Shown in pieces: positions 42,951-64,000 of a DNA stretch of 64,000 bases (its first letter is position 1; every line of letters begins with the position of its first letter). Position numbers and translations under genes: made by a program. The notes under the pieces are model-generated. The model searched no databases. It saw only the letters and a list, made by a program, of their open reading frames with translations, and had not been told where the DNA came from. The DNA is from Diadema antillarum (taxonomy: Eukaryota): the NCBI RefSeq assembly GCF_040938485.1, contig NW_027270937.1:1364001-1428000 (forward strand), in the 5' to 3' direction.

Positions 42951-43395
42951 ACTAACAATGCTCCACGGATACACTTTGCAGAACACGTTATCACAAACTG
43001 TACCGTAACATAACACGTCTAAGTAATCAATTTAAAAGCTAAGTTATGAATAGGCAAGGCGAGGAATGATTAAGAGGGGAATGATATGGTGATGAAAAAA
43101 AAAATCCTCATTTCCTGGTATATGTCTTCTATAGAAAACTGATTTCTGAACCAAGTATTAGGTGACGAGATATCATTGCACACGCCTGCGCCATCAACTC
43201 GAAAGAGTACACGTATTTCCTGTTATTGAGAGCTTAGATTAATGGAAACGTGAAAAACAACAACAACAAAGGAACATTCGCAGAGGTCTGAAAACAATTT
43301 CATAGCACATTTTGTCCTTTCACCATTCTGAACAGTGTCCGGAAAATTGCTCCTGCTTGGTTGTCATTTTAGTGCCATGCTTCCCTCGAGACAAG

Positions 43396-44496
43396 ATGGC
43401 GGATGTAGCTGGGTACCTTGACAGTAATGAGACGTTGGTTAAATCCAATTCCCGACTCGCTCCTGTAGATATTTGTTTAGCAGTAGGGTATAGCGCTGTG
43501 TTCGTTGTTGGCGTTACAGGGAACGTCGTGCTGTTGCTGGCGAGCGCACTGTCTAGAAAACTCCAGACGAGAACCTCCTGCCTCATCGTCAATCTTAGCG
43601 TCAGTGATCTGTTGGTTTCCGCTGTTCAGCCTTTTCAGATCGTCCCGATATTGGACAGACCACTACCGGAGGTACTGTGCCAACTGACAGCCGCACTTGC
43701 TATCATATCCATTGGGAGTAGTGTCATTACCATAATGCTGATTGCTGTAAATCGCTGTGTGCTCATCATCAAACCTAAGCACACATACAACCGCGTCTTC
43801 TCTTCGAGATATCTGGTCGTCATGGTGACAATACCTTGGCTGTATCCCCTCGTAGTTTTTGTGGTTCCTCATCTTACTGGTCATGGTCGTCTGGGATACA
43901 GCGCCCTCACACGACTCTGCATCTGTGACTTCACTCACAAGAATGCAAATACTTTTGTCTACCTTGTGGTAGGCACGTCGTCAATTGCCTTCGGTGTGAC
44001 GTTCTTCAGCTACTGGCTGATCTATAGGCACATGAAAAAGAGCGCCTTGAAGTCCAGGTCGTGCTCAATGCCGACCGAGAAAAGCTGTCGCAGGCACACC
44101 GAGCTTGTAATCACCAAGAATCTCCTGTGCGTGGTATGCTGCTTCGTCCTGTGCGTAACTCCCTTCATGTGTGTCTTTCTGGCTATCCCATTCCTGGAAG
44201 GACCCTCTCTGCACCGAGTTCTCAGCGTGATGCCCTACCTGTCTCTCCCACTCGTACTCGACAGTTGCTTTAACGCATTCATCTACGGCTGGAAGCATCC
44301 TCACTTCAGGATCGTCATAGCCTGCGTGCTCCGACGGCGCTGGCGCGATATCCCGGAGCCCTCCCGACTGCTGGCACGGATCCTCGCCTGCAACACTATT
44401 GATAGGCAGTGTGCGCCCCAAGATATCCGTGTTGCAAAGGGCTGTGAGGTACAGAGCGAAAATATGACCACTGAGACCAACAATGAAATTATGTGA
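43396..44496 (+). CDS. Intronless rhodopsin-class GPCR, melatonin-receptor/Tre1-moody-like (copy 1, 366 aa)
   Basis: Seven hydrophobic segments; GN (TM1), NLSVSDL (TM2), C3.25, NRC (TM3), W4.50, CVTP (TM6), DSCFNAFIY (TM7), helix 8 WKHPHFR; ATG in AAGATGG context (ORF-track start at 43312 is a TTG); AATAAA at 44536. Confidence 0.93.
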   Translation: MADVAGYLDSNETLVKSNSRLAPVDICLAVGYSAVFVVGVTGNVVLLLASALSRKLQTRTSCLIVNLSVSDLLVSAVQPFQIVPILDRPLPEVLCQLTAALAIISIGSSVITIMLIAVNRCVLIIKPKHTYNRVFSSRYLVVMVTIPWLYPLVVFVVPHLTGHGRLGYSALTRLCICDFTHKNANTFVYLVVGTSSIAFGVTFFSYWLIYRHMKKSALKSRSCSMPTEKSCRRHTELVITKNLLCVVCCFVLCVTPFMCVFLAIPFLEGPSLHRVLSVMPYLSLPLVLDSCFNAFIYGWKHPHFRIVIACVLRRRWRDIPEPSRLLARILACNTIDRQCAPQDIRVAKGCEVQSENMTTETNNEIM

Positions 44497-44639
44497 CTTT
44501 ATCGTGTGTCTGCCGTACATCATTTAGATACTGTCAATAAAATTTGTACCGTTTTACCATCGTAAACTCACAAACTAATATCACCAGAAAAAATAGGCAT
44601 AATGTCCGGGCCGTAAGTTAGCCATCGTGACTACATAAA

Positions 44640-45560
44640 TTAAAATTAGTGCTTCCTTGTATGATCACCCTAACGTATCTTCGGGTGAAACTGGACAGAC
44701 AGCAAATCGCCTTCACACAACACATTGTAGCACTGCGCGGCAAAGCATACATCAAGGAACAATCTCCTGCGTCGTCTTGATGGTTCTTCCTGGGGAGGTT
44801 ATACCAGAACCCTTCGAGCAGGGGCCCTGGCCCTCTTTTACAGTGCCGCAGAATATATGCTGCTCCAGCATGGAGGAGGAGGAGCCACGTAAGCAAACTG
44901 GATGCTACCCTAAACGACACCATGAGAGTAATCACTGGATGTCTATGTCGAACCTCAGGGAAGTATTTGCCTGTCCTGTTGGGTATTGCTCCACCAGCTC
45001 TTCGTCGGGAACATTTATAAAATGTCCGAGCTAGTTAAGAAGTCACTACAGGACACATTTATCCTTCTGCATGCCCGCATAACAACAGCCCAAAACTTCG
45101 GCCGCCAACGCTTAGGCTCTCGTCGGCCTTTTGTCAACATGCAGTATATTATTGCTCGCAAACTCCGACTTGAATCTAATGGAGTCGTGGAAGCATGACT
45201 GGCAAGAGATGGCAAAGCCTGCGCAGCTCACAGTCCATCCCAGCACAGACACTCCACCAGAGTCAATCTCTCCCGCAAAGAGTGGGTACGGTAACCCTAA
45301 ATAGCCTCCGGACTGGAGTCGGCAGTTTTGGCGCCAACATGCACCAATGGGGCCTTCGTCCGTCAGCAGCGTGCATGTGTAGTGCTCCAGAGCAAACTGC
45401 AGACCCCATTTTGCGAGACTGCACCAGGCTTGGACCTCCTGGGAAACCTTCCATCGACTTGACCAACCCAAGTCATGACACCGTTGGATGGTTACTGCAG
45501 CTTCGAGACGTAGTGTAGCAGCCGTAGTAGCAGCAAACCTCATACAAAAGAAGAAGAAGA
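44640..45560 (+). mobile_element. Degenerate 5'-truncated LINE (Ingi/Vingi-like) ORF2 3' part
   Basis: Frameshifted peptides YLRVKLDR..RNNLLRRL..SSWGG..LRAGALAL.YSAAEY..KLDATLNDTMRVITGCL and VTLNSLRTGVGSFGANMHQWGLRPSAACMCSAPEQTADPILRDC (degenerate CCHC finger), ending in an (AAG)n tail; clade assignment tentative. Confidence 0.82.
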
Positions 45561-47324
45561 TTAGAATGACAGATCTATGGCATTAATGTCCAGAGTATGT
45601 TGCGAAAACTGCAACTTTCGTCGGCGCCGTTTCAGAGGCGATGCAATCTTGTCCAAGCTGACATCAATGCTTCAAGGTTTTGAATGTTCCGAGTGTGCTA
45701 TACTCTATCACAATTACAGTCTTTGATGTAGATGTGTGACGTAGGGCCTATGCTCAACAAAATGAATTGTTAAGGAATTGTTAGTCTGGTGAAAAGGAAA
45801 CAATATTACATCGTACCATATTTCTCAAAATCGGCTATTATATTCTTTGGACGTCATGGACGTAAATCCCGGATGGGGGATGGGGGATGCATCCTCCCAC
45901 CTCCCCCTTGGAGGAGGAGGAGGGGGATGATCTGTACAAACACCCCCCCCCCCCGGAAATTTGAAAAAAAAATGGAAGAAGAATAAATGTTATTGTATTA
46001 ATTTCGGCATAATGCATGACGTTCGCACGCTCGCCTAGTGAGAACTAAACAGAACTTAACAATATTCTATCTTGTAGGATTTGTATACATACTTTCTCAA
46101 GCGCTCGCTCACTTCGCTCTCTCGCAAATAGTAATATCGGCTTAAAGTATGGTTCAGATGTTGATGCCATAAAACATCATACATGTGGTATGAAGCGCGC
46201 CCTCGGGACCATCTACAAATTACGTACGAAAAAATAAAATTCCTCCAGAATTTACCCCCCCCCCCATGTCCCCACTCCTCACGCAATGACATACACCTCC
46301 CCTCCCTTCCAAAGGGATGACTCAGCCACGAAACATCTATGTTGTATAGGTATGCAGATGGGCAAACACAGGGATGATCAAGGGCGTCGATCCTGCGGGC
46401 AAAAGGGTAGTTGCCCCCCTCCCCCCACCAATGAAAATGTTGGGGCAAACATTAATCGCCCCCATCTCAATAATTCCCAAGCTGAGGGAATATAATATCG
46501 TACTTTTTTTGTACAAAATTATCCAAATATTCATCCAGAAGTATGCACCAGATCGTTTAATTGCAATTTTGAAAATTCAAACATTCCCCGCTCGGTCCCC
46601 TTTCATACACCCATAGACTTTGTACACTTTTGAGATTGACAAATTTCCGAATATTTCATCAAAAGTGTGTACCAGATCTTAAACTTAAAAAAAAAATGCC
46701 AAAGTTCCCTCATATGAAAGGTGATATCCCCTCCCAATAAAGCCTTCCAAAAATTGAAAATTCTCCAAATAATACACTAAAAATGTGTACGATGTGTCTC
46801 ATGTCAATTCTAAGAATGCATAAGCTCCCTCGTGTTTGATGGGGATACAGATACTATGAATTGTTTAACCTTTGAGGATCGGCAATTTTTCAAGTATAAC
46901 ACCAAAAGTGTGCACTATGACAATCAAAGAAATACAAAAACTCCCTCGTGTGGAAGGAACTAGGATAGTATATCCCCCTTCCCACATCCTTCCCGGCCCG
47001 CACGTTACCCTGAATTTAGTCTTCATTTTTGTGCTATTTGATTATAGACGCAAAAATCGAATAATATCCACTAACAGTGTACACCTGCCATCATAATTAT
47101 CTCAGAATTTTAGATCTGAAAATGCGAAATCTCCCTCGTGTGAGAGGGGTCCTTTCGCTTCTCATAAAGAAATAAAAGATAACATTATATAAAACAAATC
47201 TGTGCTCAACCGTTTAGCATGAAGATTGTCATACATCTACATATTGAATAGATTCCCCGAGTGCGCGCGCTGTGCTCAAAGAACCACTACTGGTGTGGCT
47301 CTCTAAATCTCTGAAATAAAGCAT

Positions 47325-47438
47325 CAGGGGCGGATCCAGGAATTCCGTAAAGGGGAGAAGCCTTTACAAAATTAAAGGGGCGCACGCCGCTCCCCCCATT
47401 TTCTTTTTATTTCTTTTGTTTTAAGGATCCGCCAATTG
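47325..47438. mobile_element. Short hAT-like MITE (CAGGGGCGGATCCAGG terminus)
   Basis: Terminal similarity to 41277-41602. Confidence 0.5.
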
Positions 47439-48999
47439 GCGACTGGATCCGTCATTCGCGGAGCATGACTATAATTTAATATCACATGTTTGACAGAAAG
47501 TCACGTGGCCGTTTGCTGTGAAGAAAGTGGAAACATGCATGCTTTAAACGAGTGGTTTAAGTCAGCTCCTTACAGAAAAACTGAAGTGCCATGAAATGAA
47601 GCTACAATGTGAATCACCATACAATGTGTTGGTCACGGGGAAACTTGGATGACGAGTTTCATAGTCTAAACTGGATACTTTCTCTTTGCTTTGGCATTTA
47701 AAACACAGTGGATAAACACTTGAATCGTTCGAAACAAGGAAGCAAGAAATGTGTGAAGAGGATTGATATTCTATCAATTGATTCAATTGTGACAAATGAA
47801 TTACGACTGAATTTGTTGGATAAGGCAATCACCAACTTCTAATTAGAACAGAGTTGAAAACTGTCCCAAGCTGGTTGACGCGACTGTATCGTCAGTTGCT
47901 AGCTATGAACTTGCGAGACTAACGATTACATGTGATACGGGCATGCAACGAGTAGAATTAAGAATCCGTACATAAGTTGCGATTACTTATGGCAACTCAA
48001 TCCTGTAGATATTGTGTGCCTCAGGCAGTTGGGAATAACCACATGCATAACAAACTTTTGTGAAAAGAATGCATTTATCATGTAGGCTAGAAAATGGATA
48101 TGATATGCCACATAAGCGTCGTAATGGAAAGATAGTAAAATATTAAATGCCCTTAATCTTTAGAAAGGAAAAAAAAATAGAAGCAAAGTAATGAAGTTCA
48201 GCAAATGTTGTCTGTTGTAAAGTTAAAAGTTATGAATAGTTGATCCATTTCTACCTCTTGAAATGTGGTAATTGATCTTGAATAAAATTACAGAAACATG
48301 TGGAGAGAACTTGATTGGTTGAATACAGTGTAGAATCATTTCTTTGTGAGAATGTGAAATCGTTTAAATACACATGTGTGAAATAACAGTCGTACAATGT
48401 CGTACACGTATCGTGAATATTTGAATTGATATTAGATTAAACCAAAGTGGACACATACCACATGCACACACACACACACACAAACATAAGAATATACACA
48501 ACGTACACAAACACAAAATGCAGTGGATGATAGTCGAGATATGATTGAATGTCAATTTGTTTAATATAAATATAACACAACATGACTAATGCATGTCATA
48601 AAGTTGGGAAAAAGATGAATGAGTGGAAAGGAAAGGGTAACAATCAATCATGAGGAAAGATAAAAATCGTCTTCTATACATGGTTAATCAAAGCTACATT
48701 GTATATACCTTCTACAGAAACAGATCTCTTGAACTCAAGTAAGCATACGTCTGAAACAATATCATTGCTTAACGGGTTAGCGCCTGCTCCATTGATACTG
48801 GAAATGACATTTCATGTCATGAATATCTTAAATGGAAACTAGGAAAAGAATAGCACTTCTTAAAAGGGAACTCTCACAAGTCGCACATAAATCGCACTGA
48901 ACGTTTTGTTCTTTATAGGCATATGTCATGAACAAAGTGCATTGAAAAATGCTCCAGTGTGGTTGAAATTTCAAGGGCTGCTTAACCCAACGAAACAAG

Positions 49000-50097
49000 A
49001 TGGCAGATACAGCTGGCTACCAAGACAGGGATGAGGCTTTGGCCAAAAACACTTCCAGTCTCACCTCTGGAGATATATGTCTGGCCGTAGGATTCAGCGC
49101 TGTGGTCTTTGTTGGGGTTTCGGGAAATGTTGTGCTGTTGCTGGCGAGCGCACTGTCGAGGAAACTCCAAACGAAAACCTCCTACCTCATCGTCAATCTT
49201 AGTGTCAGTGATCTGTTGGTTTGCGCTGTTCAGCCGTTTCAGATCGTCTCGATGTTGGCCAGAAACAGCCGGGCAATACCCGAAGTGCTCTGCCAACTGA
49301 CAGCTTCACTGGATATCATATCTACTGGCAGTAGCGTCGCTACCATAATGCTGATTGCTTTAAATCGCTGTGTGCTCATCATCAAACCACGGCACACATA
49401 CAACCGCATCTTCTCGTCGAGAAATCTGGTCGTCATGGTGACAATGTCATGGTTGTATCCCACTGTAGTTTTAGTCCTTCCTTTGCTTATTGGACATGGT
49501 CGCCTTGGATACAACGTCCATACACAACTCTGCATCTGTGACTTCACTCACAAGAATGCAAATACTTTCGTATACCTCGTGATTTGCTCGTCGTCAGTTG
49601 CCTTCGGCGTGACGTTCTTCAGCTACTGGCTGATCTATAGGTACGTGAAAAGGAGCGCCCTCAAGTCCAGGTCACGCTCAATGCCGACCGAGAAAAGCTG
49701 TCGTCGGCATACCGAGCTGGTAATCACCAAGAATCTCCTGTGCGTGATATGCTGCTTCGTCCTGTGCGTAACTCCCTTTATGGGTGTTATGATATCGACG
49801 TTATTCTTTCAAGGACCCAGTCTTTACCGTGTCAGCAGCCTGATAGCATACGCCAGTCTCCCCTTCATAATCAACAGCTGCCTAACTCCGTTCATCTACG
49901 CTTGGAAGCATCCTCACTTCAGGGTGGTCATGACCTGTGTGCTGCGACGGCGCTGGCGCGATATTCCGATGCCCTCCCCACTGGTGGCACGGATCCTCGA
50001 CTACAACACTGGTGATAGGCAGACACCGCAAGGTATCAGTGTTGAAAAGACCTGCGAGTCACAGAGCGAAGATCTTACCATAGACACGAATATCTGA
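49000..50097 (+). CDS. Intronless rhodopsin-class GPCR (copy 2, 365 aa)
   Basis: Full ORF paralogous to copy 1; D3.32, NRC, CVTP, NSCLTPFIY; 3-aa longer ECL1. Confidence 0.93.
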   Translation: MADTAGYQDRDEALAKNTSSLTSGDICLAVGFSAVVFVGVSGNVVLLLASALSRKLQTKTSYLIVNLSVSDLLVCAVQPFQIVSMLARNSRAIPEVLCQLTASLDIISTGSSVATIMLIALNRCVLIIKPRHTYNRIFSSRNLVVMVTMSWLYPTVVLVLPLLIGHGRLGYNVHTQLCICDFTHKNANTFVYLVICSSSVAFGVTFFSYWLIYRYVKRSALKSRSRSMPTEKSCRRHTELVITKNLLCVICCFVLCVTPFMGVMISTLFFQGPSLYRVSSLIAYASLPFIINSCLTPFIYAWKHPHFRVVMTCVLRRRWRDIPMPSPLVARILDYNTGDRQTPQGISVEKTCESQSEDLTIDTNI

Positions 50098-53000
50098 CGT
50101 CTTTGTGTCTGATTCTCGTCCTTTTCAATTATTCATTACTTATTATTACTTGTTATTATTTTTTATTACTTTTTGTACCGTTGTATCATTATGAGCTCAT
50201 GAACTCATAATCATCATGTAAAATACGTCAGCTATTTTGATACAAAGATTAGGCCTAGTATAGGAATAAAAAAAATACTATATTAATATCTAGAGTGTAC
50301 GGGCAAAACTGCATATAGGAATATGGCGTTATACACCTGTCGCTTTGGTTGTGTTTGAGGCGGTACAGTGTTGTCCAAGACTGCAACGGTGTAAATTCTC
50401 ACTGCTTTTGAACTTACTTGGATCGTGCTACATGTATAGTTATCACGATGATACACAGTCTGTGAGATGTCTGCGTTACGTTATGTTCCATAAAAATGAA
50501 GTGCTGAGGAATTTCCAATCTTTGTGAAAGTAAAATTGCTTCATGCCAATAATGTGAAACTTGACTATTTGTCACGCTAATGAGATCATACGTTTGATTG
50601 CTCAGAATAAGTTTAACTTTCTGGTAGAAGTGAAGTTTATAATTTATAATTATGTACGGGTGTGTGTGTTTGTTTCTGATGTTAATCACGAATACGAGAA
50701 GTTAAGTCACATTATAACTTTTTGAATCTGTGACCTTGCTGAAGGCAAGCAGTACGAAACATCAGTAGTTGCTAGTCAAATCTATGGTGTATTACAAATG
50801 TTTATTTAGTCAATATTAGTGCCCTTTTCCTGGCCACAAGTAGGCCCAGACTGCACAGAAATGCATGTCGAGTGTTGTAATTTGCACGTGTGTCACGAAT
50901 GTGTTCCGAAATATCGCCATACACATTTTGCGTTTCTTTGTCAAGACGGGCTATGAAAATCGGAGAATAGAGATGTTCTCGATATACCCGTGTAAACGTA
51001 TATCAATGAAAGAAGTTGTGCTGCGCGTCATGTACGCTGCCCCGAAGACGACACAAGAGGGCAATACGAATATGAAATTGTCAATTTCGTGCGAAGTTGG
51101 TCCGAACTTGGTCAAAATCCTATCAACAGCCGAAGCAAGTACAGAAGGTCACAGACCTCCAGCACCACACATGAAGGCGATACATGAAGATGTGAATCTT
51201 TATATTCTATGATTAAATTTTACTCGAAGGACACACGAAGGAAACGCAGTAGCTACAAGGAAGATTTTGACACGGCTCATGAAGTTGCTGCTTGAGACTA
51301 CGAATCTCCACCGGCGGTCGTAGGACGGCTTAAGATGTCCTCGCGAATGATCCAATGCTTTCTCGTCTAAGAATCTGACGTATAATAAGAAATCTGATCT
51401 GGCAACTGTTGGTGTTAAGGTGCAAAGTTACATAATGCAAACCAAGCATTCCATCCCTACTGCAAAGAAAACAGTGTCCCACAGCGTGAGAAACACAGTG
51501 TGAAATCTCTCCACACTGTTAAATTCGAGCGTTTTAACAGTGTGAACACAATGTGAGTCATCAATACACAGTGTGAAACAAAGCATTACTATTTGAACGC
51601 TGTGAAAAAACCATACCACAGTGCGAAATCATCTTCACACTGTTAGATTCGAGCGTTTTCATAAAGTCGACTATGTGAACACACCGTGGGACACTGTCTT
51701 CTTTCCAGTAGAAATTGCACGCACATTTGCTTTAGAATCTTTCGGATGACACTTGAAGGACTAAATTCTTTTTACAGGATCACTTGTACAATTTTGTGTT
51801 GGAATGTGTGTGTGTATATGCGTGATTTAACAGATCAAAAGAAATAGATTCCTCCTACTCAAACAGCCACTTGTGTCGTGGCTCCCCAAATCTGTAGATT
51901 AAAGCTTATCTATGAGTTACTGTCATATTTGAAAGAATTAATGTCCCTGCCGTTTGCTGTGGAGGAAGTGAAAATGTACATGTTTTTACACTACAATGTA
52001 ATTATTTTAATCAACTCTTCAAGGAAATATAGATGTGCCATGAAATGTAGCCACAATTGGAATCACCACGCTGGGCAAGGGGCACACTTGGATGATAAGT
52101 TTTCTTTGACATTTAAAACACAGTGAGGAAACACTTGAATTGTTCGATAAGAGGAAGCAAAGAAATTCATACTTGTAGCTCATTCTTACTGAATAGATTC
52201 AAATTCCAAAAATGTACTATAGGACTGAGATATTGTATTAGATAAGGCAATCACTAACTTGTGATGAGAATAGAGTTGAAAACTGTCCCAAGGTGGTTGA
52301 TATGAATGCATCGTCAGCTGCTATCTTTGAACTTGCAGGACCTATGACTACCATGTGTTAGGGGCATACATTAAGAATTGGTACATATGAGTTGCGATCA
52401 CTTACGGCAACTCAATCCTGTAGACATTGTGTGCCTCAGACAGTGGGGAGTAACCACATGCATGATAAACTTTCTTGAAAAAGAATGAATCTTGTGTAGA
52501 GAAAAGAATTGATAAAATTATATACCACGTAAGCATCATGACGATAATATAGTAAAGTATAAATGCACTGTGTCCTTAGGGGAAAAAGAGGCAAAGTCAT
52601 GGATTTATGAATACACAAATGCTGTCTGTCAGTTACAGTTGCATGATTTAACTTTAAGATTCATTTCTATCACTAAAAATGCGGCAATTGAACTTGAATA
52701 AAAGTACACGTACATGTGCAGAAAGCTTGGCTGGTTACAGAATCATTCCCTTGTGAGAATGTGAAATCACTTAAATATGCCTGTGGGATAATGACACGGT
52801 ATAATGTTGTATAATGTACTCATCTTTGAATAAACCAAAGTAGACACAAACCACACGCTTCACACACGCACACACACACACACACACATGTACAGAAACA
52901 AAAAAAAAACACAAACTTTGGATAAAAGGCGATTCTTCTCAGAGCTGGGATCAAAAAAAAAAAGGAGGAAAGCTGAAATATGAATGAATGCCAATTTGTC

Positions 53001-54032
53001 CTGTTGGGATAAGAAATACCACAACCTGTTTCAACGAACTCTCTAATTTCTCAACATTGCTTGTATTCTAAAGATCATGACAGTCCCAATATAATCCTTA
53101 CTGCCCTATTATTCTGGCTAACTGAGACACATTATTTACCACCAGTGCTTGTGTACATCTCCAGGCGGTACATCTAGTTTCCCTCGATGTCTTCAGAATT
53201 ATCTCTTTTTTTTCTGGGTAGCATGGAGTGGAGCAGTTTATTTACCACTTCCGGGTTTAATCAGCTGACAAGCAATAAAAAAAGGGGGGCTCAACTGGTA
53301 TTCGTCAGTCTCACTCGCAGCACTCAAAACGCAGGATCGATTTAGTCTTTTGTCAATCATTTTCGTTAAATTTTCATTCGTATTCGTCTCATATCTCTAT
53401 CCGGTGTGATTTCCCAGTCAGTCATGTATTTTTTTTCTGTAACCGTTCACATTTTACATTCAAGAGTTAACATACACACAAGTGTCCCCCCCCACACACA
53501 CACAGAACCACAGATACAGACACACACACAAGCAATCCGAGTACACACTGATTCAAACAGACGTACCGTCTCGCAAACGAAAACACTGACAAACGATTCT
53601 AGGCAAACATGATTTGAGACAAAATTTTAAGTGTAGAATTGTAGCTTGTTTAATGTCAAAGAATGGATAACATAATTACGTTTGCTTACGAGAGAAAGTA
53701 AAAATATGTCGGCTTAAAGTTGGTTCACCCTCAAAATAAAGAATCGACAACATCTGGCTAATTTGAATGAAAAATTCATGAAATCAAGTGAACAAAAACG
53801 AATTTGATCTTCACATTCTGCTATCCGTCAGCGGGAGGGATGAATATGAATTACAATTGACGATTCTGAATGCTATGTCGTCGAAAATTTTTGACGAAAA
53901 ACGAATTACAATGACAATTGACGAAATTGAAGTTAGGATTTGCATTCCACGTGCTTCTCGGGACGGAATTGAATAATAAATCTTTGAAATTGAATGACAA
54001 AAGTGCGAAAATGGATAGGAAAACCTATATTG

Positions 54033-54260
54033 TGCACTGTGGCATAAAGGAAAAGACTCCTCGCTTTCAATCGGAGTGAACTAATTTGCATCCCGTTAAT
54101 GTCCAGCGTTCTTGGGCAGGATGTTTTTAAACCCTCATTGTCCCTTTTGAAAAAAAAAAACTGTATTTAAAATGGAGGTTACCCTCCAACGCTAAGGTAC
54201 TTATTATGGCAGCGCCCTATTGTATAGCCGTTGTCATACTGAAAAGGCTACCTTGTGTAA
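54033..54260 (+). mobile_element. Degenerate tRNA-SINE, paralogous to 42722 copy
   Basis: GCACTGTGGC..AAGACTCC..TTTCAATCGGAG head and GCTACCTTG..AAGAAGAC 3' part at the same position relative to the GPCR unit. Confidence 0.6.
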
Positions 54261-54564
54261 AGAAGACCAGACTACACGGACACACATCGCAAAACACGCT
54301 GTAACTATTAAACTTGTAACATGACGTCGATATAGAGCCTAAAAGCTAAGCTATGAATAGGCGATGCGATGAATGATTGAGAGGTTTATGGTATTTTGGT
54401 GACAAATTCTCATTGAACGGTAAATCATAGATATGCCTTGTATAGAAAACTGCTTTCTGGACACCGATATCTTGGTTAGCGCTTGCGCCATCAACTCGCG
54501 AGAGTGCTTTATGTTAATGAAAGCTTAAATAAATGGAAATGTAAAACAGCAACGGTAACAACAA

Positions 54565-55643
54565 GGTGACCAAGACAGTAATGAGACTTTGGGTAAATCT
54601 AATTCCATTCTCGCTCCTGCAGATATATTTTTAGCCGTAGGATATAGCACCGTGTTTGTTGTTGGGGTGACGGGGAATGTCGTGCTGCTGCTGGCGAGCG
54701 CACTGTCGAGGAAACTCCAGACGAAAACCTCCTGCCTCATCGTGAATCTTTGCGTCAGTGACCTGTTGGTATCCGCCGCTCAGCCTTTTCAGATCGTCCC
54801 GATATTGGACAGACCATTATCCGAGGTACTGTGCCAACTGACGGCCGCTCTTGATATCCTATCTGTTGCGAGTAGTGTCATTACCTTGATGCTTATTGCT
54901 ATAAATCGCTGTGTGCTCATCATCAAACCTAGGCACACATACAACCGCGTCTTCTCGTCGAGAAATCTGGTCGTCATGGTGACAATGTCTTGGATGTTTC
55001 CAGCTGTAGGTTTAGTCATTCCTCAGCTTACTGGCCACCAGGTCTGGGATACCACGCACTCACCCGACTTTCCATCTGTGACTTCAATTACAAGAATGCA
55101 AACACCTTCGTGTACCTTGTAAATTTCGTATCGACATTTTCCTTCAGTGTGACGTTCTTCAGCTACTGTCTACTCTTTAGGCACGTGAAAAGGAGCGCTC
55201 TCAAGACCAGGCCACGCTCTATAATGCCTGCCGAGAAAAATTGTCGCAGGCATACCGAGTTGGTAATCACCAAGAATCTCCTGTGCGTGGTATGCTGTTT
55301 CGCCCTGTGCATATCTTCCTTCGCGGGTGTCTTTATCGTTATCCCATTCCTACAAGGATCCGCTCTGCACCGAGTTCTCAGCGTGATGCCATACGTGTCT
55401 CTCCCACTCGTATTCGACAGTTGCCTTAATCCGTTCATCTATGGTTGGAAGCATCCACACCTCAGGGTGGTTATGGCCTGTGTGCTGCGACGGCGCTGGC
55501 GCGATATCCCGGAGCCCTCCCGACTGCTAGCACGGATCCTCGCCTACAACACTGGTGACAGGCAGACACCGCAAGTTTTCAGTGTCGCAGAGAGCTGCGA
55601 GACACAAAGCAAAAATCTGACCATTGACACGAACAATATGTGA
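54565..55643 (+). pseudogene. GPCR pseudogene (copy 3): no start codon and a 1-nt frameshift
   Basis: Begins at codon 6 of copy 4 (GGTGACCAAGAC); in-frame TAA at 54556-54558 upstream; GGCCAC-CAGG-TCTGGGA vs GGCCAC-GGTCG-TCTAGGA in copy 4 gives a -1 frameshift near 55040; ORF track splits into 54589-55122 and 54990-55643. Confidence 0.9.
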
Positions 55644-57640
55644 CTTGTGTGTGTGTGTGTGCTTTGCATCATTTTAAACCGTATGCCATAACTTTTGTAT
55701 CTTTTTATCATCGTAAGCTCACAAATTTATATCATCGGGTAAGTGAGCTATTTCGATACAAAGATAAGATGAAAAGATGAAAAAAAAAAAACCTGCGCGC
55801 AATATTAATATCTAGAGTATAGTGCAAAACTGTAGCAATGAGCCTCAACCTGTCGCTTTTGGTGCCGTTGAAGACCCCCCCCCCCCCCAATGTTTTACAG
55901 TCTATGTTCATAGCTTTTGACCTTTCTTGGCATGTGCTAATCATCACAATCAAATATAGTCTGTGATAAATGTACGTGACGTTCTGTTCCATGAAAATGA
56001 AGCGTTGAGGAATTTCCAGTGCTTTAAAAAGTGAAATTGTGCCGTGGCAAGTTCTATCAGAATTGGCAAATTGACTCGTTATGAGATTATACGATTGATT
56101 ACGAGAAGTTTGTTCACATTTCCAGAATTCATATTATGACGTTTTGAATTTGTAACCGTGCTGTAGACAAGCAGTACGAAACCTCAGTAGTTGCAAAACA
56201 AAGTAATGATGTATCACGATTCTTTCTTTAATCCATATCCCTGGCCACAATTAGTACACAGAGATCACGAGTGTTGTTATTTCGTATATGCGTCACAATA
56301 TCTAATGAGTTTCTTTTTTCGTAGACATTTCGCATTTCTGAGTCAAGACTAGCTAGGAATATCGGAGGGTAGAAATGATCTCGATGCGACCGCGTGTAAA
56401 CGCGTAGCAATAAAAGAAGTTGCGCTGAGCTATACTGTCCCGAAGTTGACACAACGTTTCGTAGGAAGTTGGCCCCGAACTTTAATAGTTAAAAGCCAAC
56501 AAACAGCCGAAACAATTACGATACCCACTGAGTGTCACACAATGACACGAGAACGACACACGAAGCTGTGAATCGTTATCAATTTACTCCTAAGAACATA
56601 TGAGAGAAACACGAACTTGCTCCTGGAGCCTGAAAAACTACACCGGTGGCCATACTGTGGCTTTTAAAAGAGACCCTCACGAATGACCCTATCTTTAGAC
56701 GATCTGAGCCGATTTGTTCATTTTAATCGTGTGTCCGATCTACATAATCCTTGTTCAATATCAGGAGAGTGTGACGCCTGTATTATATTGGTGCACACAG
56801 TTTTACCTGTCTTCTTGCAGTCATGTCTGTGTGTTTCATGTGCATAGTTCAAAGTTAATGCGTTTCCATGCATGCATCCTCTCCTTTGAGGAGCTGTTTT
56901 GTCAAAAGAAACACTACACTTTGTACTTGAGTTTGGAGGAAACTATTAACCACTTGGGTCGATTGGCTTAACATTATCTAATTTTGGCAAGTTACTTCCA
57001 TTTTAAAGCTATGAATCTCTTCTCTCAGAGTCTTAACTACACTACGAAGTGGCAAATGCCTGATAGTGTTGATGTGCAAAGTCAAATACAGTAGATAAGC
57101 ATTCCACTGCACGCAAATTTGCTATACAGGACGACAGTACTTTAAATTTGATATTACCGAGATCAATTACAGAAGTAGTTTTGTATATTAATACCCCACC
57201 GTGTGATGTGACAGATCAGCAGAAATACTTGTAGATTCCACTCTGCTCAAGCATCTACTTGTGCCGTGATTCTCCACTATAAAACAAAGCTGATCGATTT
57301 CATATCACGTTTGTTTTGAAAGAATGTTCCGGCCGTTTTCTCTGAAGAAGGTGGAACCGAGCATGCTCTTGATCAAGGAGTTTTTAAGCCAGTTCTTACA
57401 GGAAAAGGATGTGCCATGAAGTGAAACTATAATTAGGTGGAGAAACTTGGATGCAGGACAATGGTTTGGAAGTGCTAATCTCATTACTGTTCTTTTTTTT
57501 TTTTGCTTTGGCATTCAAAACACAACGGGCAAACACAAACATGAATCGTTCGAAACGAGGTGGCAATGAAATTGACATGTGTAGCTGATTCCTACTCTGT
57601 ACATTGAAATTTGAGAATTGAACAAGAGCACTGGGTAAGT

Positions 57641-57642
<2 letters not shown>

Positions 57643-57682
<40 letters not shown>
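57643..57682. repeat. (CA)n microsatellite
   Basis: Direct reading. Confidence 0.95.
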
Positions 57683-57684
<2 letters not shown>

Positions 57685-58220
57685 GCACACAAAATGTAGA
57701 CAAAGAGGACAAAGGTTATTCTGATGACATCTGGATGTCATGAATATGTATTTTATGTAAATTGAGTGTAACATTTTCGGCCCATGTATAGAGCCAGAAA
57801 GTTTCGCGCGGCTTTTCGGAAAGACATGGCGCTTGAGGGGAGGATTAAAGTTCTGTTGCTTTTAGTGTAAGAAAGTCTGTTGTTGATCTGTTTGCTGTTA
57901 CTGATGATATGTGTGACGTCTTGTTGAGTTCCCACCATCTTTCACTCCCCTCCATAGCACTGGAATAGAAACGAAAAGTCGAGACATGGATGAATGTTGA
58001 CCACTGTTTTCTTGCGGTCAGATATATTTTTCTTGACACAACATGTTTCAAAGAACTTCCTCATTGCTCGATGCTTTTTTTAATCTTTAATGAAGGGACA
58101 CTTGCAGTGGTCTGAAGACGGTTACTATTTCATAGCACATTTTGTTCTTTTGACATGTGAACATAGCGTCCGGAAAATTGCTCCTACGTGGTAGTCATTT
58201 TAGTGCTGTGCGAGACAATA

Positions 58221-59315
58221 ATGGCCGATCTAGCTGGCGACCAAGACAGTAATGAGACTTTGGGTAAATCTAATTCCATTCTCGCTCCTGCAGATATTTT
58301 TTTAGCTGTAGGATATGGCACTGTGTTCGTTGTTGGGGTAACGGGGAATGTCGTGCTGTTGCTGGCGACCGCACTGTCGAGGAAACTCCGGTCGAAAACC
58401 TCCTGCCTCATCGTGAATCTTTGCGTCAGTGACCTATTGGTATCCGCCGCTCAGCCTTTTCAGATCGTCCCGATATTGGACAGACCATTATCCGAGGTAC
58501 TGTGCCAACTGATAGCCGCTCTTGATATCCTATCTGTTGCGAGTAGTGTCATTACCTTGATGCTTATTGCTATAAATCGCTGTGTGCTCATCATCAAACC
58601 TAGGCATACATACGATCGCGTCTTCTCGTCGAGAAATCTGGTCGTCATGGTGACAATGTCTTGGTTGTTTCCCGCTGTAGGTTTAGTCCTTCCTCAGCTT
58701 ACTGGCCACGGTCGTCTAGGATACCACGCACTCACACGACTTTGCATCTGTGACTTCAATCACGAGAATGCAAACACCTTCGTGTACCTTGTGAATTTCT
58801 TATCGACATTTTCCTTCAGTGTGACGTTCTTCAGCTACTATCTACTCTTTAGGCACGTGAAAAGGAGCGCTCTCAAGACCAGGTCACGCTCTATAATGCC
58901 TGCCGAGAAAAATTGTCGCAGGCATACCGAGTTGGTAATTACCAAGAATCTCCTGTGCGTGGTATGCTGCTTCGTCCTGTGCATATCTTCCTTCGCGGGT
59001 GTCTTTATCGTTATCCCATTCCTGCAAGGACCCGCTCTGCACCGAGTTCTCAGCGTGATGCCATACGTGTCTCTCCCACTCGTATTCGACAGTTGCCTTA
59101 ATCCGTTCATCTATGGCTGGAAGCACCCACACCTCAGGGTCGTCATAGCCTGTGTGCTGCGACGGCGCTGGCACGATATCCCGGAACCCTCGCGACTGCT
59201 GGCACGGATCCTCGCCTACAACACTGGTGACAGGCAGACACCACAAGTTTCCAGTGTCGCAAAGAGCTGCGAGACACAAAGCAATAATCTGACCATTGAC
59301 ACGAACAATTTGTGA
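58221..59315 (+). CDS. Intronless rhodopsin-class GPCR (copy 4, 364 aa)
   Basis: Full ORF; D3.32, NRC, TM6 CISS (no Pro6.50), DSCLNPFIY; ATG at 58221 (ORF-track start at 58188 is a GTG). Confidence 0.92.
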   Translation: MADLAGDQDSNETLGKSNSILAPADIFLAVGYGTVFVVGVTGNVVLLLATALSRKLRSKTSCLIVNLCVSDLLVSAAQPFQIVPILDRPLSEVLCQLIAALDILSVASSVITLMLIAINRCVLIIKPRHTYDRVFSSRNLVVMVTMSWLFPAVGLVLPQLTGHGRLGYHALTRLCICDFNHENANTFVYLVNFLSTFSFSVTFFSYYLLFRHVKRSALKTRSRSIMPAEKNCRRHTELVITKNLLCVVCCFVLCISSFAGVFIVIPFLQGPALHRVLSVMPYVSLPLVFDSCLNPFIYGWKHPHLRVVIACVLRRRWHDIPEPSRLLARILAYNTGDRQTPQVSSVAKSCETQSNNLTIDTNNL

Positions 59316-62300
59316 CTTATGTGTGTGTGCTTTCCAACATTTTAAACCGTATGCCATAACTTTTGCATCTTTTTATCATCATAAGCCCACAAATTTATAT
59401 CATCGGGTAAATATGTGAGCTATTTCGATACAAAGATAAGATGAAAAAATGAAAAAAAAAACTGCGCGCAATATTAATATTTAGAGTATAGTGCAAAACT
59501 GTAGCAATGAGCCTGAACCTGTCGCTTTTGGTGCCGTTGAAGAACCCCCCCCCCCCCCAATGTTTTACAGTCTATGTTCATAGCTTTTGAACCTTCTTGG
59601 CGTGTGCTAGTCATCACAATTAAATATAGACTGTGATAAATGTACGTGACGTTCTGTTCCATGAAAATGAAGCGTTAAGGAATTTCCAGTGCTTTAAAAA
59701 GTGAAATTGTGCCGTGGCAAGTTCTATCAGAATTGGCAAATTGACTCGTTATGAGATTATACGATTGATTACGAGAAGTTTGTTCACATTTCCAGAATTC
59801 ATATTATGACGTTTTGAATTTGTAACCGTGCTGTAGACAAGCAGTACGAAACCTCAGTAGTTGCAAAACAAAGTAATGATGCATCACGATTCTTTCTTTA
59901 ATCCATATCCCTGGCCACAATTAGTACACAGAGATCACGAGCGTTGTTATTTCGTATATGCGTCACAATATTCAATGCGTTTCTTTTTTCGAAGACATTT
60001 CGCATTTCTGAGTCAAGACTGGCTAGGAATATTGGAGGGTAGAAATGATCTCGATGCGACCGCGTGTAAACGCGTAGCAATAAAAGAAGTTGCGCTGAGC
60101 TATACTGTCCCGAAGTTGACACAACGTTTCGTAGGAAGTTGGCCCCGAACTTAGTTAAAAGCCAACCAACAGCCGAAACAATTACGATACCCACTGAGTG
60201 TCACACAATGGCACGAGAACAACACACGAAGATGTGAATCGTTATTAATTTACTCCTATGAACATATGAGAGAAACACGAACTTGCTCCTGGAGCCTGAA
60301 AAACTATACACCGGTGGCCATACTGTGGCTTTTAAAAGAGACCCTCACGAATGACTCTATCTTTAGACCATCAGAGCCGATTTGTTCATTTTAATCGTGT
60401 GTCCGATCTACATAATCCTTGTTCAATATCAGGAGAGTGTGACGCCTGTATTATATTGGTGCACACAGTTTTACCTGTCTTCTTGCAGTCATGTCTGTGT
60501 GTTTCATGTGCACAGTTCGTAGGGCGAAAGTTAATACGTTTCCATGCATGGATCCTTTCCTTTGAGGAACTGTTTTGTCAAAAGAAACACTACTTGAGTT
60601 TGGAGGAAACTATTAAACACTTGGGTCGGTTGGCTTAACATTATCTAATTTTGACAAGTTTCGGGGGTAGGCCTACTTCCATTTTAAAGTTATGAATCTC
60701 TTCTCTCAGAGTCTTACCTACACTACGAAGTGGTAAATGCCTGATAGTGTTGATGTGCACAGTCAAATACGCTAGATAAGCATTCCACTGCACGCAAATT
60801 TGCTATACAGGACGACAGTATACTTTAAATTTGATATTCCCGAGATCAATTACAGAAGTAGTTTTGTGTATTAATACCCCACCATGTGATGTTACAGATC
60901 TGCAGAAATACTTGTAGATTCCACTCTGCTCAAGCATCTACTTGTGCCGTGATTCGTCTCCACTATAAAACGAAGCTGATCGATTTCATATCACGTTTGT
61001 TTTGAAAGAATGTTCCGGCCGTTTTCTCTGAAGAAGGTGGAACCGAAAATGCTTTTGATCAAGGAGTTTTTAAGCCAGATGCAGGTTTGAAAGTGCTAAT
61101 CTCATTACTGTTCTTTTTTTGCTTTGGCATTCAAAACACAGCGGGCAAACACAAACATGAATCGTTCGAAACGAGGTGGCAATGAAATTGATATGTGTAG
61201 CTGATTCCTACTCTGTAGATAAGCACACAAAGCGTAGACAAAGAGGACAAAGGTTATTCTGGTGAAATCTGGATGTCATGAATATGTATTTTATGTAAAT
61301 TGAGTGTAACATGTTCAGCCCATGTATAGAGGCAGAAAGTTTCGTGCGGCCTTTCGGAAAGACATGGCGCTTGAGGAAGGAATAAAGTTCTGTTGCTGTT
61401 ACTGTAAGAAAGTCTGTTGTTGATCTGTTTGCTGTCACTGCTGATATGTGTGACGTCTTGTTGAGTTCCCACCATCTTTCACTCCCCTCCATAGCACTGG
61501 AATAGAAACGAAAAGTCGAGACATGGATGAATGTTGACCACTGTTTTCTTGCGGTCAGATATATTGTTTCTTGACACGGCATGTTTCGAGGAACTTCCTC
61601 ATTGCTCGATGTTCGTCGTTTTTTTTTTTCCTGCAGATCGTATAACAGTCGTATGATTCCATTTTATTCTCGACTTCTATACAACATACTACCCTGGACA
61701 AAATTGGGCGAGACGCTCTGTTTGCTGTCCGTGCGAGTGTGCTTCTCCTGACACAGAGTGGCAGTATACTGTGTATGGATTCCCTCAGCTTTTCTTTTCG
61801 ATTAACTGGAGTGGAAAGTGCATGCGGAGTGGTATGTTTCGTATATTTCTGTTGGTCCCCACCCGCATTTTCCTTTTTGTTTTCTTTGAATATGTGTGTG
61901 TGTGTGTGTGTGTGCGTGTGTTTACTCTGAAGAGGCGAAAATAGCAGAATTTCTTTTGATGATGACAACACTTACCCGTGAAAATCACGGAGACGACAAT
62001 TTCGTCACTCGCCCGACAACTGTCCGAGTTCACTCTTCCCCTCTGACTGCATGACTGGCGATCGTTCACCCGTAACAGATGAATAGACAATGTTTAGATG
62101 TTGAGGAACTTTCTGTATCACCAATCTGCATGTCGGTGAAAGGTTATGTCGGGGTCCCCCTCCTCTGGAGAAGGAAGGGAATTCCGTTTACGCAACTCGG
62201 TCGAGTCACGAAGCTGTCGAACCGTGATTTTCACAAGAGAGTCAAGTCAAACAGATTTAATTACGTTTTGTTAAATCATATATTGTACTTCCTAACTCAA

Positions 62301-62544
62301 TCAAAATCTATATAGATAATACCAGACTTTTTTTTTTTAGTTCCGTAACACTGCACTGGAGTCTATTATTCATGTGTGAGATCTTCTTTAGAGTGTTATT
62401 CTGTCTTCAGCAATGTCCAAAAGCATAAAAGTTCGATTTTACCGATGGATATGTTATTTATCCCATGATCTATTCTTGAAGGTCTGATTTGATTCCTCAA
62501 ACTGAAATCAAAGTCAAGATAATACGATAAAAACAAAACTTGGT

Positions 62545-63020
62545 TACAGTTCGTGTTTTCGAAGGTACAAAATTCTAAAGGTTCGTTAATACGAAAATTA
62601 AATTATGTTCGTTATTCCTATGGTTCATTAATCCAAAAGGGAAAAGAGATTCGTCATTCCGAACGTATAGGTTAATCTGAAAGCGAAATAAAGTTGGTAA
62701 TTCCGAAGCTTCGGTAGTACGCACGTCTATATTTTCGAATTAACAAACCTTATTTCATATTCGGACAAACGGACCTTATTCAATTTTGCAGTTACGAACC
62801 TTCGGAATGACAAACCTTATTTCATTTTCGGAATTAAGAACTTTCAGAATAACGAACCTTTGGAATAACGCCACAAATGTTTGGATTAACGAACCCTTTT
62901 TATTTTCGGATTGATGATCCCCTCGGTTTAGGGAATTAGTGTGTTCCGGAATAACGAATTTTTGAAATAACGATTCCTCTTTCATTTTCGGATTAACAAA
63001 CCTTTGGAATAACGAACGTC
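62545..63020. mobile_element. Foldback-type element built from TTCGGAATAACGAACC-like ~15-mers
   Basis: Motif is inverted in the left part (GTTCGTTATTCC) and direct in the right part; termini approximate. Confidence 0.55.
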
Positions 63021-63483
63021 ACACAAAACTTATTGCAACTTATTGCAAAACACATTAGATGTAACGCAACACGACTACAGTAAATAATCAATATGTATCC
63101 CCTCGTGGGATATTGACTCTTCACCCTTACCTACACATACAAACACACCTCACTATAAAAGTTTAACCTTCTATTGACTTATGAGGTGAATTAATAATAT
63201 CTGAGACGTCCTTTCTGCAGAAACCGACACAATTACCTTGTACTTCTTGTCTGAAACGTTTTCATTGTTACTCCTGTGCAATCAACTGGAATGAGCGCTC
63301 TAGGCTAAGGAGATCTCAAATCAGCCAACAATTAACAACAACAACAACAAAAGATAGCGCCGATAGAAGCTTTCAAACAATCACGTTAAACATTTTATAA
63401 TTCAGACATTGTAATAATCAGGATGCACTTAATATTACCCCTGCGTGGTTTCCTTTCAGGACTGCTTCCCATGATGAGACAAG

Positions 63484-64000
63484 ATGGCGAGTCGAGCAAG
63501 TTACAAAGACAGTAATGAGACTTTAGGCCAATCTGATTCCCGTCTCGCTCCCGCAGATATTTGTTTAGCCGTAGGGTTTAGCGCTGTGTTCGTTGTTGGG
63601 GTGACGGGGAATGTCGTGCTGTTGCTGGCGAGCGCACTGTCGAGGAAACTCCAGACGAAAACCTTCTGTCTCATCGTGAATCTTTGCGTCAGTGACCTGT
63701 TAGTATCAGCCGCTCAGCCTTTTCAAATCGTCCCGATATTGGACAGACCACTACCCGAGGTTCTGTGCCAACTGACAGCCGCTCTTGATATCCTATCTGT
63801 CGGGAGTAGTGTCATTACCATGATGCTTATTGCTGTAAATCGCTGTGTGCTCATCATCAAACCTAAGCACACATACAACCGCGTCTTCTCTTCGAGAAAT
63901 CTGGTCGTCATGGTGACAATGTCTTGGCTGTATCCCATCGTAGTTTTGGTGGTTCCTCATGTTACTGGTCATGGTCGTCTTGGATACAATGCCCTCACAC
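63484..64000 (+). CDS. Intronless rhodopsin-class GPCR (copy 5, 3'-partial at window edge)
   Basis: ATG GCG AGT CGA.. open to the window end: MASRASYKDSNETLGQSDSRLAPADICL..GN..NLCVSDL..CQLTAALDILS..NRC..WLYP..GHGRLGYNALT. Confidence 0.9.
   Translation, partial: MASRASYKDSNETLGQSDSRLAPADICLAVGFSAVFVVGVTGNVVLLLASALSRKLQTKTFCLIVNLCVSDLLVSAAQPFQIVPILDRPLPEVLCQLTAALDILSVGSSVITMMLIAVNRCVLIIKPKHTYNRVFSSRNLVVMVTMSWLYPIVVLVVPHVTGHGRLGYNALT

What the first reader, a model, noticed from the sequence alone, without database searches (positions are those of the whole stretch)
43396..64000. GPCR cluster with aminergic-type Asp3.32 on a non-aminergic scaffold: candidate convergent amine chemoreceptors
Seen: counting from C3.25 to R3.50 (CQLTAALDILSVGSSVITMMLIAVNR), copies 2, 3, 4 and 5 have Asp at 3.32, while copy 1 has Ala (CQLTAALAII). 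Established: Asp3.32 is the amine counter-ion in biogenic-amine receptors and TAARs. These receptors lack the aminergic W7.40/Y7.43, DRY and CWxP signatures and instead have NRC, like melatonin/Tre1/GPR84-type receptors. Intronless tandem clusters of this kind match the expanded candidate sensory (surreal) GPCRs described in sea urchin. Inference: a lineage-specific family that may have converged on TAAR-like amine detection, with copy 1 retuned to a neutral ligand.
Basis: partly seen in the sequence, partly recalled or inferred. Interest (0 to 1): 0.7.

Follow-up and report, generated by a model that had tools for sequence, protein, structure and literature searches.

The report
Sea urchin orphan receptor gene array
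This is a row of closely related, sea-urchin-specific receptor genes (four intact, one broken) that independently gained the acidic pocket residue that amine receptors use to hold their ligand; that hints at a positively charged ligand but does not show that they sense amines.

Summary
The window (Diadema antillarum) carries five tandem, same-strand class A GPCR genes, each with a single coding exon. Counting back from R3.50, copies 2-5 have Asp (GAT) at 3.32 and copy 1 has Ala (GCT). The array also continues beyond the window.

The genes form a Diadema-only clade of at least 19 members inside an echinoderm-wide orphan superfamily. Its profile matches melatonin-related, aminergic and GPR84 receptors about equally, so there is no orthology to any characterised receptor.

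Asp3.32 is derived. All outgroups have Ala, Thr, Asn, Ser or Ile, and only 5 of 129 superfamily representatives are acidic there. On the tree it was gained once and lost at least twice.

dN/dS of mostly 0.2-0.5 shows real but loose constraint. The aminergic partners (DRY, W6.48, W7.40, Y7.43) and the TAAR fingerprint are absent, and the pocket is mostly aliphatic.

A cationic ligand is a fair inference. Amine chemoreception is untested: no RNA runs were listed and no ligand data exist.

The scan had already noted a similar Asp3.32 orphan array on other DNA of this genome (s1-229759), with the same conclusion.

The parts
43396..44496 (+). Copy 1, intact single-exon CDS (366 aa, = P0008); Ala at 3.32, NRC, NAFIY (Ala at 7.50)
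43699..43701 (+). Copy 1 codon for position 3.32: GCT (Ala), one base from the GAT of the other copies
49000..50097 (+). Copy 2, intact CDS (365 aa); Asp3.32; Thr at 7.49; 92% identical to D. setosum P0001
49312..49314 (+). Copy 2 codon 3.32: GAT (Asp)
54568..55643 (+). Copy 3, pseudogene. Homology starts about 18 nt into the CDS, so the ATG and upstream block are replaced by unrelated sequence. It also has a 1-bp deletion and Cys45.50 changed to Ser. The Asp3.32 codon is still present.
54853..54855 (+). Copy 3 codon 3.32: GAT (Asp)
55038..55044 (+). Site of the 1-bp frameshift in copy 3 (break between the two tblastn pieces and between the two overlapping ORFs)
58221..59315 (+). Copy 4, intact CDS (364 aa, = P0009); Asp3.32; Ser instead of Pro at 6.50
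58524..58526 (+). Copy 4 codon 3.32: GAT (Asp)
63484..64000 (+). Copy 5, first 172 codons; the full gene (362 aa, = P0004) runs past the window end; Asp3.32
63787..63789 (+). Copy 5 codon 3.32: GAT (Asp)
43358..43372 (+). Pyrimidine-rich tract ending in AG, 23 nt upstream of the copy 1 ATG: a likely splice acceptor of a 5'-UTR intron (inferred from sequence only). Similar sites end near 48975 (copy 2), 58203 (copy 4) and 63459 (copy 5); copy 3 has none.

Best explanation
The window holds the start of a Diadema-specific tandem array of orphan class A (rhodopsin-like) GPCR genes, each with a single coding exon, evolving by gene birth and death. In the window there are four intact genes and one pseudogene. 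Just downstream lie at least two more intact genes and two more broken ones. A near-identical second array sits 1.2 Mb away on the same contig.

The clade belongs to an echinoderm-wide expanded orphan superfamily. Its marks are N-R-x instead of DRY, no Trp6.48, a conserved ECL2 motif GxGxLGY, and a conserved helix-8/tail motif KHPxF...IPxPS. It has no one-to-one relative among characterised receptors.

Asp3.32 faces the pocket by homology. It was gained once at the base of the Diadema clade and has been kept under purifying selection. Single-base changes removed it at least twice: copy 1, and the P0005/P0006/c7 lineage.

Shown: gene structure, family placement, the derived state of the Asp, and selective constraint. 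Inferred: the proteins are ligand-sensing receptors of the lineage-specific, probably environmental, kind, and the Asp most likely pairs with a positive charge on the ligand. An amine is one candidate among several (basic amino acid, betaine, polyamine, Lys/Arg of a peptide).
For: - Family: Pfam 7tm_1 hits. An AlphaFold model has seven helices, mean pLDDT 89.7 and pTM 0.86; TM3 is helix 95-128 and Asp is residue 105 in a block with pLDDT above 90. Foldseek returns only class A GPCRs, with no favoured family.
- Asp position: gapless TM3 alignment puts the Asp on KOR Asp3.32 and GPR84 Leu3.32.
- Relatives: the closest are only Diadema and Lytechinus, then other echinoderms.
- Tree: a Diadema clade of 19 has 100/99 support. 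Outgroups carry Ala, Thr, Asn, Ser or Ile at 3.32. The minimum history is one gain plus two losses. The AU test rejects one clade for the non-Asp copies (p = 0.023). Copy 1 is c5-like along most of its length.
- Rarity: only 5 of 129 superfamily representatives are acidic at 3.32.
- Selection: dN/dS is 0.22-0.49 in all but one pair. Pocket positions are slightly more variable than other TM positions (0.75 vs 0.58 bits, p = 0.045). Between paralogues pocket dN/dS is 0.52 against 0.33 for the rest of the TM.
- Birth and death: pseudogenes and fragments. The array extends beyond the window.
Against: - No expression data: no RNA run was listed, and all database members are genome-annotation models. 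Sensory or any other tissue use is therefore unknown.
- No ligand data.
- The usual partners of an amine-binding Asp3.32 are absent (Tyr7.43, Trp6.48, Trp7.40) and the rest of the pocket is mostly aliphatic. The Asp could belong to an internal polar network instead.
- The excess pocket variability is weak, and no dN/dS exceeds 1.
- I could not read model coordinates, so 'pocket-facing' rests on alignment to solved receptors, not on measured geometry.
- Several copies deviate at microswitches: Ser6.50 in the copy 4 group, Ala7.50 in copy 1, Thr7.49 in copy 2.
Confidence: 0.7

Rival explanations
1. One reading: the array encodes TAAR-like chemoreceptors for small waterborne amines, expressed in sensory appendages. 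Asp3.32 is the amine counter-ion, and copy 1 has been re-tuned to a neutral odorant.
For: Asp3.32 is the canonical amine site in aminergic receptors and most TAARs (PMC8890504). Here it is a derived, conserved residue in a hypervariable pocket position. Tandem arrays, single coding exons, pseudogenes and dN/dS of 0.2-0.5 resemble chemoreceptor families. Amines such as histamine act on urchin metamorphosis (PMC3460732, listed). Echinoderm expanded GPCRs have been found in tube feet, spines and pedicellariae (PMC7042368).
Against: There is no expression evidence. The TAAR fingerprint NSxxNPxxYxxxYxWF is absent, as are Trp7.40, Tyr7.43 and Trp6.48. There is no second acidic or aromatic cage residue beyond Phe6.51/Phe6.55. 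Asp3.32 is not specific to amines.
Confidence: 0.2
2. Asp3.32 pairs with a cationic group that is not a small amine odorant: a Lys, Arg or N-terminus of a peptide, or a basic amino acid. This is how opioid, somatostatin, NPBW and urotensin receptors work.
For: With the clade profile, kappa-opioid receptor is the top solved relative and SSTR1 scores close behind. KOR Asp3.32 aligns with the family's Asp. The automatic names given to clade members are opioid-, somatostatin- and NPBW-like. The model has a beta-hairpin ECL2 (169-172, 177-180), as in peptide receptors (my own knowledge).
Against: The scores are equally close to GPR84, 5-HT4 and beta-adrenergic receptors. With the superfamily profile, melatonin-related and aminergic receptors lead instead, so the opioid-like names probably reflect the Asp itself. 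Fast lineage-specific duplication is unusual for neuropeptide receptors. The N-terminus is short.
Confidence: 0.2
3. The Asp is not a ligand counter-ion. It is part of an internal polar network or a tolerated substitution, and the receptors bind uncharged or lipid-like ligands, as GPR84 and melatonin receptors do, or signal constitutively.
For: The pocket is otherwise aliphatic: Ile3.33, Leu5.42, Val6.48, Val7.43, Leu7.42. GPR84 is the best single-sequence solved hit. Asp was replaced by Ala or Gly at least twice without loss of the reading frame or of constraint. An unusual second Asp at 7.45 in 17 of 19 members points to altered internal polar sites.
Against: A buried unpaired carboxylate is costly, yet it is kept in 15 of 19 members of two species under purifying selection. 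Position 3.32 is hypervariable across the superfamily, as expected of a ligand-contact site. In the lineage that lost Asp, 2.60, 3.37 and 5.46-5.47 changed as well, which looks like pocket re-tuning.
Confidence: 0.3
4. The array is decaying: the intact-looking ORFs are recently dead or unexpressed duplicates with no function.
For: There is one pseudogene in the window and more next door. Some copies deviate at Pro6.50, Pro7.50 and Cys3.25. No transcripts were found.
Against: dN/dS is well below 1 in close cross-species pairs and in paralogue pairs. ORFs of 362-366 codons are intact in both Diadema species. Ala7.50 also occurs in a vertebrate melatonin receptor (NAVIY in P0025).
Confidence: 0.05

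Closest known systems
Sea-urchin rapidly expanded GPCR lineages (surreal-GPCRs of S. purpuratus) and the OR-like GPCR arrays of starfish and sea cucumbers
   Same: Echinoderm-specific class A orphan receptors in tandem arrays, with single coding exons and lineage-specific expansion (PMC5442662 and PMC7042368).
   Different: This expansion is specific to Diadema; the nearest Lytechinus relatives recovered were few and carry Ala3.32. Assignment to a published surreal group (A-F) could not be tested. No expression data are available for these genes.
Trace amine-associated receptors (TAARs) and aminergic receptors
   Same: Asp at 3.32 in the same TM3 register; class A fold; tandem gene arrays in the case of TAARs.
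   Different: No DRY (NRC instead), no Trp6.48, no Trp7.40, no Tyr7.43 and no TAAR TM7 fingerprint. The Asp was gained independently inside an echinoderm family whose other members lack it.
GPR84 and melatonin / melatonin-related (GPR50) receptors
   Same: Best solved hits by sequence: GPR84 with a single sequence and GPR50 with the superfamily profile. N3.49 is shared with the melatonin receptor NRY, and copy 1 even has the melatonin-type NAxxY.
   Different: Identity is only about 25%. Scores are no better than to 5-HT1A, M4, alpha-1A or KOR. GPR84 has Leu at 3.32 and GRY, and a vertebrate melatonin receptor has Met at 3.32.
Opioid / somatostatin / NPBW peptide receptors
   Same: Asp3.32 aligns with KOR Asp3.32; these are the top hits with the clade profile and the source of several automatic gene names.
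   Different: No DRY, no Trp6.48 and no Tyr7.43. There is no preferential similarity once the profile is widened to the superfamily.

Membership tests
Class A (rhodopsin-like) GPCR | Pfam 7tm_1 match above cut-off and a seven-helix fold | tested here: met
   7tm_1 scores 72-124 bits against a cut-off of 30.5. The AF2 model has 7 TM helices plus helix 8, pLDDT 89.7. All Foldseek hits are class A GPCRs.
Class A (rhodopsin-like) GPCR | Anchor residues N1.50, D2.50, R3.50, W4.50, P6.50, (N)PxxY, and the Cys3.25-ECL2 Cys pair | tested here: met
   Present in most copies. Exceptions: Ser6.50 in the copy 4 group, Ala7.50 in copy 1, Thr7.49 in copy 2.
Aminergic receptors | Asp3.32 | tested here: met
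   Copies 2-5 have Asp; copy 1 has Ala.
Aminergic receptors | DRY at 3.49-3.51, CWxP with Trp6.48, Trp7.40, Tyr7.43 | tested here: not met
   NRC; Cys-Val/Ile-Thr/Ser-Pro/Ser; Leu7.40; Val/Ile7.43.
Aminergic receptors | Descent from the aminergic clade, with Asp3.32 inherited | tested here: not met
   The nearest outgroups and 124 of 129 superfamily representatives lack an acidic 3.32, so the Asp was gained within Diadema. No reference aminergic sequences were in the tree.
TAAR | TM7 fingerprint NSxxNPxxYxxxYxWF (PMC8890504) | tested here: not met
   TM7/helix 8 reads N/D-S-C-L-N/T-P-F-I-Y-x-W-K-H-P-H-F, with no Tyr at +4 and no WF.
Opsins (several copies are auto-named rhodopsin- or melanopsin-like) | Lys7.43 for the retinal Schiff base (established knowledge) | tested here: not met
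   7.43 is Val, Ile or Ala in all 19 clade members.
Melatonin receptors | Specific orthology; NRY and NAxxY motifs | tested here: inconclusive
   N3.49-R3.50 is shared, but 3.51 is Cys. NAxxY occurs only in copy 1. Profile scores to GPR50 and MT1 are no better than to 5-HT1A, M4 or GPR84.
[quoted passage not shown] | Echinoid lineage-specific expansion, tandem clusters, single coding exon | tested here: met
   definition taken from PMC5442662 and PMC7042368.
[quoted passage not shown] | Placement in one of the published S. purpuratus groups A-F | not testable with these tools
   The original paper and its sequences are not held. Only one S. purpuratus relative (P0183) was recovered, and its group is unknown.
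[quoted passage not shown] | Expression in tube feet, pedicellariae or spines | not testable with these tools
   No RNA run was listed for the stretch.

The most novel reading that the evidence does not exclude
A sea-urchin lineage built its own cation or amine chemoreceptors by placing an Asp at 3.32 of a non-aminergic orphan scaffold. It then lost that Asp again at least twice to re-tune individual copies. This would be an independent, datable replay of TAAR and aminergic receptor evolution, in a species whose larval settlement cues matter for reef restoration.
Probability: 0.2. Interest if true: 0.65.

Novelty: new member of a known kind. Interest (0 to 1): 0.35.

Why it matters
If the Asp really binds a cationic cue, the clade offers a compact natural experiment. 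There is one gain and two losses of the key residue among genes that are 70-90% identical. Paired D3.32A and A3.32D swaps could therefore test how ligand charge selectivity evolves in GPCRs outside vertebrates. It could also lead to receptors for waterborne cues in Diadema antillarum, a keystone Caribbean grazer. As things stand, it is a well-documented but ordinary lineage-specific orphan GPCR expansion with one suggestive residue.

Tried and rejected
- The first structure prediction, from the 17-sequence family alignment, was unusable (pLDDT 42.5). It was replaced by a 144-sequence alignment.
- The RNA run search returned nothing, so read laying was not used and expression stays open.
- The original surreal-GPCR paper is not held, so group assignment was dropped.
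- I first assumed copy 1's Ala was shared by descent with its syntenic D. setosum counterpart P0005, which is also Ala and also lies upstream of the copy 2 orthologue. The tree, the AU test and a sliding-window comparison argue against that.
- I suspected that a 217-aa RefSeq model (P0216) was the second ORF of pseudogene copy 3. It is a truncated model of copy 5.
- An opsin reading, suggested by the automatic names and the squid rhodopsin top Foldseek hit, was rejected because there is no Lys7.43.
- A reference phylogeny with aminergic, TAAR, MTNR and GPR84 sequences was not built, because no tool supplied those sequences. Ranking of solved structures by profile was used instead.
- Model coordinates are not exposed to scripts, so pocket geometry and docking were not possible.
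Full report
**What is in the sequence**

The second half of the window carries five similar open reading frames on the + strand, spaced 3.7-5.6 kb apart.
- Copy 1 is at 43396-44496 and copy 2 at 49000-50097.
- Copy 3 is split into two overlapping ORFs between about 54568 and 55643.
- Copy 4 is at 58221-59315.
- Copy 5 starts at 63484 and runs off the window end.

All are rhodopsin-family 7TM proteins by Pfam. The window is from Diadema antillarum (GCA_040938485.1, contig JBFRCO010000049.1, roughly 1.364-1.428 Mb). Copies 1, 4 and 5 equal database proteins P0008, P0009 and P0004.

**The residue**

TM3 aligns without gaps between Cys3.25 and Arg3.50 to GPR84 and to the kappa-opioid receptor. The family's Asp lies on the opioid receptor's 3.32 Asp. 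Counting back from R3.50, the codons are:
- copy 1: GCT (Ala), 43699-43701
- copies 2-5: GAT (Asp), at 49312, 54853, 58524 and 63787

The family has NRC for DRY, Val/Ile at 6.48 instead of Trp, Leu at 7.40 and Val/Ile at 7.43. One detail is wrong: GPR84 has GRY, not an N3.49 motif.

Copy 3 is a pseudogene for three reasons.
- Its first 18 nt or so and the whole upstream block are replaced by unrelated sequence, so there is no ATG.
- A 1-bp deletion near 55040 shifts the frame.
- The conserved ECL2 Cys is Ser.

'Intronless' is true of the coding region only. Copies 1, 2, 4 and 5 each have a pyrimidine tract ending in AG 17-24 nt before the ATG, which suggests a non-coding first exon (sequence only).

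**Extent of the family**

- The array continues past the window with copy 6 (Asp), copy 7 (Gly3.32, DRC), a fragment, and a frameshifted copy 8.
- A second array 1.2 Mb upstream on the same contig is 98.8-99.2% identical over 12.5 kb, including intergenic DNA, apart from a 3.8-kb indel.
- Further copies lie at 245-265 kb on that contig.
- D. setosum has a syntenic array.

**Relatives**

- Word-based and exhaustive profile searches find close relatives only in the two Diadema species. A few Lytechinus genes follow at 42-47% identity.
- Beyond that comes a large echinoderm superfamily (260 representatives at E below 1e-30) from Diadema, Lytechinus, Strongylocentrotus and Patiria. Its members carry contradictory automatic names: melatonin-, moody-, melanopsin-, adrenergic- and nociceptin-like.
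- The superfamily shares N-R-x, an ECL2 GxGxLGY motif and a KHPxF...IPxPS tail.
- Against solved structures, the clade profile scores KOR, GPR84, 5-HT4, beta-adrenergic, GPR50 and SSTR1 within a few bits of each other.
- The superfamily profile favours GPR50, 5-HT1A, M4, alpha-1A and GPR84 equally.
- A confident AlphaFold model (pLDDT 89.7) matches class A receptors generically, including squid rhodopsin, mu-opioid, alpha-1A, MT2 and GPR84.

There is therefore no orthology to a characterised receptor, amine-binding or not.

**History of Asp3.32**

- In a maximum-likelihood tree of 26 proteins, the 19 Diadema genes form one clade (100/99).
- Its outgroups have Thr, Ser, Asn, Ala or Ile at 3.32.
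- The fewest changes are one gain and two losses: copy 1, and the P0005/P0006/c7 lineage. Each loss is a single-base change from GAT.
- Forcing the non-Asp genes into one clade is rejected (AU p = 0.023, though the group was named after seeing the tree).
- Copy 1 resembles the Asp-bearing copy 5 group along most of its length.
- Across 129 superfamily representatives, 3.32 is hypervariable (Leu, Thr, Ile, Val, Ser and others) and acidic in only 5.

The Asp is therefore convergent with the aminergic Asp at the residue level.

**Selection**

- Pairwise dN/dS is 0.22-0.49 for cross-species and paralogue pairs. The one exception is copy 4 against D. setosum L3c, at 0.97 on very few differences (dN = dS = 0.015). 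The intact genes are constrained, but loosely.
- Canonical pocket positions are a little more variable than other TM positions (p = 0.045).
- Between paralogues their dN/dS is higher (0.52 against 0.33) but never exceeds 1.
- Copy 1 shows no extra relaxation (0.37-0.38). Its Ala7.50 has a precedent in a vertebrate melatonin receptor, which reads NAVIY.
- The lineage that lost Asp also changed 2.60, 3.37 and 5.46-5.47. That looks like pocket re-tuning rather than decay.

**Function**

Nothing here shows what the receptors bind or where they are made.
- No RNA run was listed, and all database members are annotation models.
- In characterised receptors, Asp3.32 almost always pairs with a positive nitrogen: an amine, or a Lys, Arg or N-terminus of a peptide. 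This is established knowledge; for TAARs see PMC8890504. A cationic ligand is therefore the leading guess.
- Against a classical amine site, Tyr7.43, Trp6.48 and Trp7.40 are missing, the TAAR fingerprint is absent, and the remaining pocket is mostly aliphatic.

I put the specific 'TAAR-like amine chemoreceptor' reading at about 0.2.

**Comparison and verdict**

This is a new, Diadema-specific member of the known kind 'lineage-specific expanded orphan GPCRs of echinoderms' (PMC5442662, PMC7042368). Its one suggestive derived residue is worth a mutagenesis test. The scan had already reported a similar Asp3.32 orphan array on another piece of this genome and reached the same conclusion (s1-229759). 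I did not re-examine that DNA.

Noticed in passing
window 42788-55255 versus L007 (same contig, 168-189 kb): A second copy of the array, 1.2 Mb away on the same contig and in the same orientation, is 98.8-99.2% identical over 12.5 kb including intergenic DNA. It has a 3.8-kb insertion at the point matching window 45145-45150. Its proteins differ from copies 1, 2 and 5 by 6, 1 and 1 residues. It is either a very recent segmental duplication or an uncollapsed haplotype in the assembly.
   Followed up: partly
window 56000-62000 versus L003; window 45000-54000 versus L002: Divergence from D. setosum is uneven. The copy 4 locus is about 96% identical including flanks (dS 0.015). The copy 2 locus is about 89.5% identical (dS 0.17). 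Not all 'orthologous' pairs may be true orthologues, or the rates differ.
   Followed up: partly
window 44065-44523 (-) and 58884-59357 (-): Antisense ORFs of 152 and 157 aa overlap the conserved 3' ends of copies 1 and 4 and resemble each other. They are most likely a by-product of the conserved sense sequence.
   Followed up: no
copy 2 residues 305-338 (window about 49912-50013) and the same region in all copies: Helix 8 and a further predicted helix (327-338) carry a tail motif, KHPxF...RRRWRDIPxPSxLLARIL, that is conserved across the whole echinoderm superfamily. It may be a docking site for a shared intracellular partner.
   Followed up: no
L002 4815-6674 (D. setosum, between the copy 1-like and copy 2-like genes): A 619-aa ORF that looks like a non-LTR retrotransposon reverse transcriptase lies in the intergenic spacer; it was judged by eye and not scanned against any family library. 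It is absent from the matching D. antillarum spacer.
   Followed up: no
L004 5952-7046 (d1) and L005 15140-16234 (c7), L004 10007- (P0012), D. setosum P0010: One otherwise intact copy has Trp in place of Cys3.25, so it has lost the disulfide Cys. Three clade members have reverted NRC to DRC.
   Followed up: no
window 2310-2939: A low-complexity Thr/Ser/Gly-rich repeat gives long ORFs in several frames on both strands; this is a simple-sequence artefact.
   Followed up: no
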